Below, piece after piece: positions 54,565 to 59,092 of a stretch of 64,000 nt of DNA. The stretch is from Podarcis erhardii. Taxonomy: Eukaryota. How positions within the stretch are numbered: the first letter of the stretch is position 1; each line of letters opens with the position of its first letter. A program made the translations under genes and the position numbers. The notes under the pieces are model-generated. The model searched no databases. It saw only the letters and a list, made by a program, of their open reading frames with translations, and was not told where the DNA came from. The stretch lies in NCBI GenBank assembly GCA_964252035.1, contig OZ176209.1. One strand, 5' to 3'.

Positions 54565-54576
54565 CTGAGGAATGGA

Positions 54577-54585
54577 GTTAAGGAA
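54577..54585 (-). promoter_or_regulatory. U12-type branch point TTCCTTAAC
   Basis: Plus strand gttaaggaa; perfect match to the U12 branch consensus; branch A at 54578, 13 nt from the 3' splice site. Confidence 0.92.
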
Positions 54586-55144
54586 GGTTGATTTTTTTAA
54601 AATATATACATATATACATGCATACACTATATTGGAAGAGGGGGAAGGATTTCAAAGAATTCTGTTTAATGAAGACATTCCTAATCCCTTGTATTTTGAA
54701 AAGAAACATACGCCTTTTAAAGTGCTTTTCAACCCTCCCAGCCAAGTTTCTTCCTAATATGTCAAAAGCACGGTAGGCCAGTCGCGTGCCAGAGTAAACA
54801 TAGATTTCTTAAAAGTTTTTTTTCTTTATTTAGATTTAATTTCAAGTTTATTTTACCCTCTCGGGCTGTGCTGTTATTTGACAGACAGCCCACCAAATTC
54901 TCTCTCTTTCTTATTGCATTTGCAATACAGCTGCAAACTGCCTATTATTGCTGTCATTTAAGAAAATATCTCCCAAATCTTAATACACAATGGTTCAGCA
55001 TTTTTCAACCCTCTTTTGCCAACTTTTGAAAAGAAATTTAAGAGAGCAGTATTCAAAGAAGCACAAGGGGTTTAAAAGTTATGTAAGAGTTTATTTTTAA
55101 CATTATTTTTAACATTCAGCATCTCTTCATTCTAATCTCTGAGG

Positions 55145-55168
55145 GTGTGTGTGTGTGTGTGTGTGTGT
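55145..55168. repeat. (GT)12 microsatellite
   Basis: Direct observation. Confidence 0.98.
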
Positions 55169-56654
55169 AACACAAGGTTGTTAAAGGGCATTATTAAAAT
55201 AAGTTGTGGCTTATTTTGCATACTTTCATACCAGAAATATGCCAAACAGTGGTGTCTATTTGAAAATGCATGTATTTGTTCAGAATACATTTTACCACTT
55301 AACTGTTCTCAAAGTGAATTCCCCATCATCAGTTTTTCACCTTAATTGGGTTGGGCAGAAAATGACTGAAACCTCATTTCTTATTGGTTCCCCCTAATAT
55401 CAATATCAATACACGCACACTCTTGCTGAGCTGATGGACAGCACAGAGGTCTAATAGGACTGTACTCTCATTTCCTCCTAAGTTGTTCCCTGTGATTATT
55501 CTATTGAGCAAATAAAGGAACCACATGAAGACACCCAATTTGCAGAAACTTTTCCTAAGAATGCTATGTGTCAGTAGAAGGTAAGGTTTTTGCAGGACAG
55601 TGGTGACACCCAGGGCGACCTGCACCCACCGCACCCCCCTTCATCCACCCCTGCGAGGGGAATTAGTGTCATTGCATATGGAGGCTTTCCATGTGTAGCT
55701 GACCCCATGTTGTTGTGTTTTTAGGCCATCATTTACCTATATGGATTAAGCCTTAGAAAGGGACTCTATTGGTCAGCCAAGGCAATCGTTGCCTTGCTGC
55801 CCACAAAGAATAAGAAACAAAAAATAGACCCCTCCTTGCATATGACTATGCAAGTTTTAATTTGTGCTGGATAGTTCATGATCAGACTGAAATATTGAAA
55901 AGTAGGTCATTCTCAACTATAGAGAAAGCAATTAGCATCTGGTTACAGATGCACATTTTGTCCTCGTTGTTTCTGACAGCTAATGCCCTGTTTACAATTT
56001 TATGTTGACCTGTATAAACTATTGTAAAGACACAAGAGTTCATAATCTCTTTTAATTTCTCATATGCACAACTTTTAAAGTTTTGTAGGTTTCCTTTTAG
56101 TACAAATTATGGAAGGTAAGAGAGTGAATGGTCAGAGGTAGGAGAATTTGTTATGCACCGCTGAAATGTTTCATTATGACCTGGCTTGAAAACCATTAAT
56201 TAAGATATATTAAGCTCTATTTAATGGAGCTTTTTAGTGCAGTTTCACATTAGTTTTATACCAAGACTTGGTATATAGGGCAATAACAGCTGGAGAGAGC
56301 TGTTGTCCCTCATTGTCCTGCTTGCGGGCTTCCCAAAAGCACCTGGTTGGCTAATGTGGGAACCTCATGGGCCTTTTGTTCTGATCCAGCAGGGCTTTTC
56401 TTGCATTCACATCCTCTTCGGTGTGCAACAGAAATAGGCTGAAACTGTATTTTCAGTATGCGAAATGATTATAGCAACATGTTTCCCCCTCTCCTCTCTT
56501 CTTTCAGTAGAAAATGTATTAGTCTGCAGAAGAGTCCCAGTTTTGTGCATTAAATGTTATCCTTTCCCCCCAAAAAGATGCACCTTAGCACAAACTATGT
56601 TGCTTACCAATGTTTTGAATTATCAAGACACATTAAGAACATTAGAATAGCCCT

Positions 56655-57012
56655 GTTTGAACATAAAACTAAACCACTGGTTATTAACTATGGTTATAGA
56701 CTGCTTATTAACCAAGGTTTGTAGTTCGTTTCTAAACCTTAGCTAATATTAACTGTTACTTAACTTTATGTGCAAGCCCAGACCTTATCCTTAATTATGG
56801 TTAAAGAGCTGCCACAGCCCAAAAGCTACAGAGCTGCAAGTGAAGAACAGCAATTCCTGGCTTGTGTTTCCTTTAACAGGGGGAGGACAAGAATGCAACA
56901 AGCCAAGGTTCACATTATGGTCTGCCAGACACACTAGCTTCCATTATTGTGTGTTAACTATGGTTAGCATTAACTATGGTTAATGTTAACCATAGCTTAG
57001 CATTATTTACAA
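56655..57012. repeat. MITE-like repeat with arrayed TTAACTATGGTT motifs
   Basis: Motif copies at 56684, 56791 (variant), 56954 and 56970, plus an inverted variant at ~56986. Confidence 0.55.
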
Positions 57013-57597
57013 ACTAGGCCAATATGTTGTTACATAAATTACAGTAGGGTGGAGTTGGTGGACTCACCAAAGAGATGCTGTTTTTCAGCAACAAGTCCAT
57101 AGTGGCCATAAGTATGTGCTCTGCTCAGGAACCTGGTATTTGAGGTGAGTCATTGAGAGGATTTCAACTGTTTATTTGTTATGTGTTTTCAGTAAGACCA
57201 TTATCTCTCAAGAGATGACTACATTGCTCAGTCATTTTCAGCCTCCTACTTTACAACACATCAATCTGTCCAACCAGCTCTGATTTCATACTTTATATCA
57301 GGCCTCCCCTTGTGGGCTCTGCCTAAAGATGTATGGTTGGCAAGGTGCCAAGCAAGTAACCAATATAGGTTTGCCGCCACCATCCCACTACCCATCCCAA
57401 ATTAGCCATACATCATGGTTTTGAGTGTCTATGTTGGGAAGGATAACAAATATAACTGCTTGAGAGGATTAAAAAACTATCACCTGAAAAATGGGGGGGG
57501 AAAATGAGTTGATGGAGAATATCTGTGAACCCTTTCTTGACCCATTTTTATCTCCACCCAAAATCCTGAAAGCAAAAGTTGATTTCACAGCATCTAA

Positions 57598-57646
57598 TAA
57601 GATTATGGTACTTTGATAATATTTTTATTAAGATTATGGTACTTTG
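57598..57646. repeat. 18-bp direct repeat with 13-bp AT spacer
   Basis: taagattatggtactttg at 57598-57615 and 57629-57646. Confidence 0.92.
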
Positions 57647-59082
57647 GTTTTTTTAAATCCATCTTTCTGTTTGCTCCTCCAAGTTTCATTGTGAACAGTC
57701 TGTGCACCAGAGATTTAATCTCAGGCCCAAATTAGATAGAACAATGCCAGAATCTGTGTGTTTAAGCCCAGCTTTGTGTGCCAGCTTTGGCATTTTATTC
57801 CTGACTTGTTATGTCCAAAGTGGATTACATCCTGGCTTATTATCTGATATCAAACTAGAGTTTCCCAGTTTGCATGTAATGAAAATGTCTGTCTTAACAC
57901 AAGCCACAAATGAAGTGCCAATGCCAGCATGCAAGAGAAGGGAGGGAGGAGAGGGGGGGCACTTTCTCCAACATGCATTCCAAGATTCATAGACCAAGCA
58001 TTTTTTTTAAAAAAAAAACCACCACTACCAAATACTTAGCATCAATGCCATCAGGTCTTGCTACCAGATCAGCTGTAATAGTAGCCAGATTGGCACTTAA
58101 CAATAATCCTTTTGTTGCACTTGCAAGATGGTGTTTTAGTGTAATAATCTTAAATACTTCTACTTGTAATGGACCCTGCTCCCAAGTGAATGTACTTCAG
58201 ACTGCAACCTACACCTTCCTATTACTATCAGCCTATTCCACATGGACTTTGCCAAATAAAAGTTGCACAACTGAACAATATAGGTCAAGGTAAAACCATG
58301 GCTACATCAGAAAATTTGGATTAAGGGGGTGGGAATCCAAGTGGATTTTAAAGGCTTGGGTTCTTGAATACTTGGTCATTTGAAATTGGGTTTATTTTTC
58401 AGGTCTAGAACCAATATTTAATTGTTGAACGATTATAGACAATGGCTCTATTGGTATCCATCAATGTAATTTACACAGCAGCCAAAAACCATCCATTTTG
58501 TGCATAGGATGGCCCATGAATGCTCCTGCATTCTGCAGCAATTTCATGTTGCCACAAGTAGGAGTCCTTATGCTTTAAGAGTCTAGACCTAGGTCCCGAT
58601 GCATCTCCCCCCACCAAAAGCCCATCAATTTGGGCCCTGGCAAAAAACTAAGTGGGCACACCACTGGGGTTTAAACCCCTCTGTCCATACCCCTGGTGGG
58701 GGGTGTAAATTGGCCATTCCTTCCTCATCAAAATGGTCGTTTGATGAGGATGGAGGAGGTGATTCACCCCTTACTCAGCTTATCTGCAGAAATAAGCTGA
58801 AGAGGAAGGGCTTGTGTGCCGTTAGTGTGCGTGTGTGTGCGTGTGTGCATGCACAAATGTTTAGGTGAGATGGTCACAGTCACTTTGGGTCATACCCACC
58901 ACCAGCATGCAACCCCCAAAAGATTGACCAAGGTCATAAAAGATCTACCCCCACTGATCTAGATGGAGACCAACCATATGTTGTTGCTCATGTAGTTCCT
59001 TCTAGTGCTCCCTTCAACCTAATGCACATGCTTGGTCACATTTGTAAATCACATTTGCATACTGACTCATATCACTCCATCA

Positions 59083-59092
59083 AAAAGGATAT
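59083..59092 (-). promoter_or_regulatory. U12-type 5' splice site ATATCCTTTT
   Basis: Plus strand aaaaggatat at 59083-59092, directly after codons GAA TGG AA. Confidence 0.92.

What the first reader, a model, noticed from the sequence alone, without database searches (positions are those of the whole stretch)
54565..59092. CACNA1C intron 2 is a minor-spliceosome intron with hybrid AT-AG ends
Seen: the 5' end is ATATCCTTTTTG, the branch site TTCCTTAAC sits 13 nt before CAG, and there is no pyrimidine tract. Only AA|...|A CCA restores W-K-P-F-E. Known: voltage-gated Na+/Ca2+ channel genes carry conserved U12 introns in this region, some with atypical termini, so the class itself is not new. Inference: AT-AG is a rare end pair that GT-AG-only gene predictors mis-annotate, and slow U12 splicing could be rate-limiting for Cav1.2 in this lizard.
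Basis: partly seen in the sequence, partly recalled or inferred. Interest (0 to 1): 0.72.

Follow-up and report, generated by a model that had tools for sequence, protein, structure and literature searches.

The report
Known U12 AT-AG intron in CACNA1C

Summary
On the minus strand, CACNA1C exon 2 (59414..59093) and exon 3 (54564..54459) are separated by a 4528-nt intron (59092..54565). It begins ATATCCTTT, carries TTCCTTAAC with the branch A 13 nt from the 3' junction, and ends CAG.

The protein alignment leaves exactly one residue to be made by the split codon AA|A. An in-frame TGA four codons into the intron, and the lack of any other usable GT or AG, fix the borders.

It is not new. A published human dataset (PMC8280824 supplement) already lists the orthologous CACNA1C intron as U12, AT-AG. 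Rat Cacna1c intron 2 is a known minor intron (PMC8767276).

My own comparison shows A at +1 and a terminal AG in cobra, sea turtle, two birds, kangaroo rat and paddlefish. A second lizard shows the A at +1; its contig does not reach the 3' end. Two teleost CACNA1C genes and three CACNA1D-type genes have G at +1. Sequencing error is therefore excluded.

The junction in this lizard, and the "rate-limiting" idea, remain inferred.

The scan has flagged other U12 introns in this genome (ZNF830, CEP170), but not this one.

The parts
59093..59414 (-). CACNA1C exon 2 (322 nt). Codons 59412..59095 encode 106 aa, and the exon ends with AA of a split Lys codon.
   Evidence: One search gives the translation. 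One search matches it to Cav1.2 residues 18-123, E 5e-60, about 94% identical. The upstream acceptor ...ctcctctttctcctag| is U2-type.
59084..59092 (-). U12-type 5' splice site ATATCCTTT (A-type).
   Evidence: In alignment A1, +2..+9 TATCCTTT is invariant in 13 of 13 loci. Position +1 is A in 8 CACNA1C loci and G in 2 teleost CACNA1C and 3 CACNA1D-type loci.
59080..59082 (-). In-frame TGA four codons into the intron (W-K-Y-P-F-stop). A retained intron would truncate the protein before transmembrane segment IS1.
54565..59092 (-). Intron 2, 4528 nt, AT...AG ends, GC 39%, no N.
54577..54585 (-). U12 branch-point sequence TTCCTTAAC. The presumed branch A at 54578 is 13 nt from the last intron base.
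   Evidence: The same motif sits at the same spacing (11-13 nt to the exon) in six other CACNA1C loci.
54565..54567 (-). 3' splice site CAG.
   Evidence: The terminal CAG is conserved in L001-L006 and L010.
54459..54564 (-). CACNA1C exon 3 (106 nt): the third base of the Lys codon plus 35 codons, PFEIIILL...NSNL (start of segment IS1). It is followed by a U2-type donor, gtaagt.
   Evidence: Ion_trans, weak; Cav1.2 residues 125-159, 35 of 35 identical.

Best explanation
This is the lizard orthologue of the long-known minor-spliceosome (U12-dependent) intron 2 of CACNA1C (Cav1.2), in its normal AT-AG form.

Inferred mechanism, from established knowledge of U12 splicing:
- U11 snRNP pairs with the ATATCCTTT donor.
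- U12 snRNA pairs with TTCCTTAAC and bulges the branch A.
- U4atac/U6atac.U5 then replace U11.
- The 3' site is picked by its short distance (13 nt) from the branch point and not by a pyrimidine tract. This is why the minor spliceosome tolerates a terminal G opposite a 5' A.

Splicing joins AA to A and makes Lys-124 between Trp-123 and Pro-125. Retention would hit a TGA after four codons.

Shown here: the motifs, their exact placement, the forced borders, and conservation of A(+1) and G(-1) across tetrapods and a paddlefish.

Inferred, not shown: actual use of the junction in this lizard, dependence on the minor spliceosome, and slow kinetics.
For: Sequence and motifs.

Exon identity and the one-residue gap (residue 124).

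Forced borders: the in-frame TGA lies at 59082..59080. No GT lies between the donor and that stop; the nearest downstream GT is at 59075. The upstream GTs at 59108 and 59103 would delete conserved I-V-E-W. The intron tail has an in-frame stop at about 54600 and no other AG after 54627.

Orthology and conservation: ATATCCTTT is present in a second lizard, in Ophiophagus, Chelonia, Tinamus, Zosterops, Dipodomys and Polyodon. In the last six, whose loci reach exon 3, the intron also ends branch motif-N12/13-CAG (TTCCTTAAC in five, TCCCTTAAC in Tinamus).

Literature:
- The human CACNA1C intron (NM_000719.6) is listed as U12 AT-AG in the PMC8280824 datasets.
- Rat Cacna1c introns 2 and 13 are minor introns, and U6atac knock-down lowers Cav1.2 and ICaL (PMC8767276).
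- AT-AG is the commonest non-canonical U12 pair, with 11 human and 8 mouse cases (PMC1557818).

Runs guessed to be RNA hold 5-10% of the sampled words of the stretch, close to the exon share of 8.5%. This is weak.
Against: There is no direct RNA evidence from this species.

The mRNA alone cannot tell AT-AG from a one-base-slid TA-GA.

No formal intronIC score was computed.

Dependence on U11/U12/U6atac is taken from mammals. In the rat study it was intron 13, not intron 2, that was assayed by qPCR.
Confidence: 0.93

Rival explanations
1. Assembly or sequencing error at 59092: the true base is G, and the intron is an ordinary GT-AG U12 intron.
For: Teleost CACNA1C and all CACNA1D-type loci do have G at +1, so a G form is viable.
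Against: A at +1 is seen in independent assemblies of 7 other non-teleost species and in the human catalogue. DNA runs of three organisms hold 64-95% of the sampled words of the stretch.
Confidence: 0.01
2. The exons are joined by the major (U2) spliceosome through a nearby cryptic GT and/or AG, and the U12-like motifs are not used.
For: Gene predictors do choose such sites, for example in Naja naja (extra KYPFLV), Acipenser CACNA1C (WK lost), Grus and Columba. PMC8280824 reports activation of cryptic major sites when minor splicing fails.
Against: In the window every downstream GT lies beyond the in-frame TGA. Upstream GTs delete invariant residues. No alternative AG lies after the last in-frame stop. 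Solved Cav1.2 proteins have exactly W-x-P here. There is no U2-type donor consensus and no pyrimidine tract.
Confidence: 0.03
3. This is a non-functional copy (pseudogene or unexpressed duplicate) whose splice signals are relics.
For: No transcript evidence was obtained here.
Against: Both exons are open and 94-100% identical to functional Cav1.2. The splice motifs are perfect. The flanking introns have normal U2-type signals.
Confidence: 0.02

Closest known systems
Human CACNA1C minor intron (NM_000719.6, about 4.8 kb), listed as U12, AT-AG in the datasets of the CENATAC paper (PMC8280824); also rat Cacna1c intron 2 (PMC8767276)
   Same: It is in the same gene, at the same position and phase (between the second and third base of the Lys codon after Trp-123). 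It has the same AT-AG ends, the same type of donor, a branch site one base different, and a similar length.
   Different: Only the species differs. The internal intron sequence is not conserved beyond +9.
Homologous U12 intron of the paralogues: CACNA1D and CACNA1S (GT-AG), CACNA1A, CACNA1B and CACNA1E (AT-AC)
   Same: The position after the E-W codons is the same, and TATCCTT and TCCTTAAC-type signals are present. See for human, and for sturgeon, agamid lizard and catshark CACNA1D-type genes.
   Different: The terminal bases differ. CACNA1C has the 5' A of the Cav2 genes and the 3' G of the other Cav1 genes. This is the 'intermediate' state that PMC1557818 proposed for AT-AC to GT-AG subtype switching.
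Other AT-AG U12 introns (NUP210, USP21, RAPGEFL1, INPP5B, SCN10A and others; PMC1557818 Table 3)
   Same: They have the same rare end pair together with full U12 donor and branch signals. They belong to the 'A-type' class, which is spliced less efficiently and is CENATAC-dependent (PMC8280824).
   Different: They lie in unrelated genes. Several of them switch between human and mouse, whereas this one is stable across tetrapods.
U2-type AT-AC introns of sodium-channel genes (Wu and Krainer; discussed in PMC2831892)
   Same: They are non-GT introns in voltage-gated channel genes.
   Different: Those introns have a G at +5, a U2-like donor and no TCCTTAAC. Here +5 is C and the U12 signals are perfect, so this intron does not belong to that class.

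Membership tests
U12-type (minor spliceosome) intron | 5' splice site matching [A/G]TATCCTT from +1 | tested here: met
   ATATCCTTT lies at 59092..59084. TATCCTTT is invariant in 13 of 13 homologous loci.
U12-type (minor spliceosome) intron | Branch-point sequence TCCTTRAY about 10-20 nt from the 3' splice site | tested here: met
   TTCCTTAAC lies at 54585..54577, and the branch A is 13 nt from the intron end. Motif and spacing are conserved in 7 loci.
U12-type (minor spliceosome) intron | No long polypyrimidine tract upstream of the 3' splice site | tested here: met
   The 40 nt upstream of the branch site are 47.5% pyrimidine and contain an A7 run.
U12-type (minor spliceosome) intron | Position and phase orthologous to a catalogued U12 intron | tested here: met
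   The exons match Cav1.2 residues 18-123 and 125-159. The human orthologue is listed as U12 AT-AG, and rat intron 2 is minor.
U12-type (minor spliceosome) intron | Junction actually used in RNA of this species | not tested
All Logan ORF hits were genomic read-throughs, not transcripts.
U12-type (minor spliceosome) intron | Splicing depends on U11/U12/U4atac/U6atac | not testable with these tools
   The only evidence is by analogy: U6atac knock-down in rat cardiomyocytes (PMC8767276).
AT-AG ('A-type', AT-AN) subtype of U12 introns | First two bases AT and last two bases AG | tested here: met
   A one-base slide (TA-GA) gives the same mRNA but breaks both consensus motifs. A(+1) is present in 8 non-teleost CACNA1C loci, and the terminal AG in the seven of them that reach the 3' end.
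U2-type AT-AC / non-canonical U2 intron | U2-like donor (G at +5, A at +3/+4) and a pyrimidine tract | tested here: not met
   Position +5 is C, the donor is ATATCC, and there is no tract.

The most novel reading that the evidence does not exclude
The AT-AG state of CACNA1C intron 2 may be a 'frozen intermediate' of the AT-AC to GT-AG subtype switch. It would have been held since before ray-finned fishes and tetrapods split. It is present in paddlefish and in all tetrapods sampled, whereas teleost CACNA1C and the paralogues CACNA1D and CACNA1S carry GT-AG and the Cav2 genes carry AT-AC. Selection might keep Cav1.2 in the less efficiently spliced, CENATAC-sensitive A-type class as a brake on channel dosage. 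The alternative is that drift simply never completed the switch.
Probability: 0.12. Interest if true: 0.45.

Novelty: already known. Interest (0 to 1): 0.12.

Why it matters
It has little significance as a discovery. The intron, its class and even its unusual end pair are catalogued in human, and minor-intron control of Cav1.2 has been shown in rat.

It has two practical uses:
(1) It is a clear annotation trap. Gene models in many public vertebrate genomes end or misjoin at exactly this junction, so CACNA1C models in new reptile genomes should be checked here.
(2) Across the Cav family the intron is a neat, deeply conserved example of the three U12 end-pair states: AT-AC, AT-AG and GT-AG.

Tried and rejected
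Exon 3 in other species was located with an anchor taken by coordinates from 54459-54500, and the window's 3' end was handled only from 54570 upward.

The exons were searched separately by reference.

(3) Wu and Krainer 1999 (PMC84117) is not held.

(4) PMC6865273, PMC2831892, PMC12149502 and PMC5224493 gave context but not the end pair of this intron.

(5) Pfam on exon 2 found nothing, as expected for the disordered N-terminus.

(6) Logan ORF hits (P0004-P0006, P0016, P0027, P0028) are genomic read-throughs, not transcripts.

(7) Unlabelled Logan proteins at 92-94% identity, which could be mammalian or human, were not fetched or located. P0013 was displayed once, looks mammal-like, and was not used further. 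The human sequence strings printed in the paper's supplement were read but not entered into any tool.

(8) The search of earlier findings had nothing at this place.

Full report
**1. What is in the sequence**

The gene lies on the minus strand.
- Exon 2 runs from 59414 to 59093. It is preceded by a normal U2-type acceptor (pyrimidine tract, then tag|g).
- Its codons 59412..59095 give 106 residues. These match residues 18-123 of solved Cav1.2 (alpha-1C) channels at E 5e-60, with 100 of 106 identical. They match alpha-1D and alpha-1S far less well.
- Exon 3 runs from 54564 to 54459 and is followed by a normal gtaagt donor.
- Its 35 full codons are identical to Cav1.2 residues 125-159, the start of segment IS1 (weak Pfam Ion_trans hit).

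Exactly one residue (124) is missing between the two matches. The two bases AA at the end of exon 2 plus the A that opens exon 3 supply it as Lys. The gene identity and the 'intron 2' label are therefore correct.

**2. The intron ends**

- The intron (59092..54565, 4528 nt, 39% GC, no N) starts ATATCCTTT. This is the full U12 donor consensus with A at +1.
- It carries TTCCTTAAC at 54585..54577, the full U12 branch consensus.
- Twelve bases follow the motif before exon 3, and the last three are CAG. The presumed branch A (54578) is 13 nt from the intron's last base, in the range typical of U12 introns (my knowledge of the class).
- The 40 nt upstream of the branch site are not pyrimidine-rich (47.5%, with an A7 run).

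On chance: ATATCCTT occurs 8 times in the window on both strands (3.3 expected) and TTCCTTAAC twice (0.7 expected). Such motifs alone mean little. What counts is that one of each sits exactly at the borders fixed by the protein alignment.

**3. The borders are forced**

- Reading on from exon 2 gives K-Y-P-F-stop, with the TGA at 59082..59080.
- No GT lies between the donor and that stop.
- The two nearest upstream GTs (59108, 59103) would remove invariant residues of I-V-E-W.
- At the other end, the intron tail read in the exon-3 frame has a stop about 35 nt before the exon. The nearest other AG (54627) lies upstream of that stop.
- The only ambiguity is a one-base slide (TA...GA). It yields the same mRNA but destroys both consensus matches.

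**4. Is it an error or a lizard peculiarity? No.**

A word search with exon 2 alone returned many short proteins from other vertebrates. Twelve were traced to their DNA. The exon ends were located with anchors taken from the window by coordinates, and the donors were aligned (A1).

| Group | Loci | Intron +1 | Ends where exon 3 was reached |
|---|---|---|---|
| Non-teleost CACNA1C | window, a second lizard (Logan contig), Ophiophagus, Chelonia, Tinamus, Zosterops, Dipodomys, Polyodon | A | AT-AG (Ophiophagus, Chelonia, Tinamus, Zosterops, Dipodomys, Polyodon) |
| Teleost CACNA1C | Scleropages, Danionella | G | GT-AG (Danionella) |
| CACNA1D-type | Acipenser, Phrynocephalus, Scyliorhinus | G | GT-AG (Acipenser) |

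- Positions +2 to +9 (TATCCTTT) are identical in all 13 sequences.
- Beyond +9 the intron is not conserved.
- In the six non-teleost CACNA1C loci that reach exon 3, the intron ends with the branch motif (TTCCTTAAC in five, TCCCTTAAC in Tinamus), then 12 or 13 nt, the last three being CAG.
- Intron length ranges from 1.1 to 6.6 kb.

**5. What is already published**

- The supplementary datasets of the CENATAC paper (PMC8280824) list the human CACNA1C intron of NM_000719.6, about 4.8 kb, as U12 with AT-AG ends. Its branch site differs from the lizard's by one base.
- The same tables list the homologous intron as AT-AC in CACNA1A, CACNA1B and CACNA1E, and as GT-AG in CACNA1D and CACNA1S.
- Rat Cacna1c has two minor introns, 2 and 13. 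U6atac knock-down causes minor-intron retention (intron 13 was the one assayed), less Cav1.2 protein and a smaller L-type current (PMC8767276).
- AT-AG is the commonest non-canonical U12 pair (11 human, 8 mouse). It has been proposed as a viable intermediate in AT-AC to GT-AG switching (PMC1557818).
- The annotation problem is also known (U12DB abstract; TOGA2 preprint).

**6.

Mis-annotation is directly visible.
- Models from Sphaerodactylus, Mauremys, Ophiophagus, Pleurodeles, Protopterus, Chelonia, Zosterops, Polyodon, Scleropages, Polypterus, Danionella and Triplophysa read through into K-Y-P-F/L and stop.
- Naja inserts six residues, and Acipenser CACNA1C drops W-K.
- Grus and Columba jump between internal sites. 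Ascaphus ends wrongly.
- Tinamus is correct.
- The GT-AG forms (teleost CACNA1C, CACNA1D) are broken in the same way. The cause is therefore the U12 signal set and not the AT end alone.

The 'rate-limiting' idea is plausible by analogy with the rat and CENATAC work. It was not tested here and is not specific to this animal.

**7. Limits and rules kept**

There is therefore no read-level evidence for the junction, the base calls or expression in this species.
- Runs guessed to be RNA hold 5-10% of the sampled words of the stretch, close to the 8.5% that the exons make up. This is only a hint.
I worked beside those places.
- The joined exon model was not built or searched.
- Human sequence printed in a paper's supplement was read but not entered into any tool.
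- No contig taken for human was fetched.

**8. Verdict**

It is the ordinary, already catalogued state of this intron in tetrapods. The only mildly interesting by-product is the distribution of end pairs. AT-AG is stable in CACNA1C from paddlefish to mammals. GT-AG is found in teleost CACNA1C and in CACNA1D and CACNA1S. AT-AC is found in the Cav2 genes. This fits the published 'intermediate' model but does not show selection.

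Noticed in passing
L010:13829-13881 and L012:7222-7274 (teleost CACNA1C); L008, L009, L011 (CACNA1D-type): The same intron has G at +1 in the CACNA1C genes of two teleosts (Danionella, with full GT-AG ends, and Scleropages, donor only). It also has G at +1 in CACNA1D-type genes of sturgeon, an agamid lizard and a catshark. Paddlefish and all tetrapod CACNA1C genes sampled have A. This is a subtype switch within one orthologous intron.
   Followed up: partly
proteins P0002-P0003, P0008, P0022-P0029, P0044-P0057: Deposited gene models of at least 15 vertebrate genomes end in a read-through (IVEWKYPF...) or misjoin at this junction. 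Naja gains 6 residues, Acipenser loses WK, and Grus and Columba jump between internal sites.
   Followed up: partly
window 59332-59334 (-): Codon GCT gives Ala in E-H-I-A-T-P-G. Every other CACNA1C orthologue displayed (reptiles, birds, amphibian, lungfish, fishes, and the solved mammalian channels) has Pro there. The site lies a few residues before the N-terminal calmodulin-binding segment, which matched PDB 2lqc.
   Followed up: no
window, 8 sites (2863, 17990, 20485, 39564, 41791, 42063, 44005, 59085): ATATCCTT occurs 8 times against 3.3 expected (3 of 100 shuffles reach 8). I did not examine the seven other sites. I assume they lie in flanking intron sequence and are chance matches.
   Followed up: no
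window 54570-54585 compared with L001, L003, L004: The branch site and the bases that follow it are identical in lizard, cobra, sea turtle and white-eye. That is more conservation than the U12 consensus alone requires. Intron length meanwhile varies from 1.1 kb (Danionella) and 1.3 kb (Dipodomys) to 6.6 kb (cobra).
   Followed up: partly
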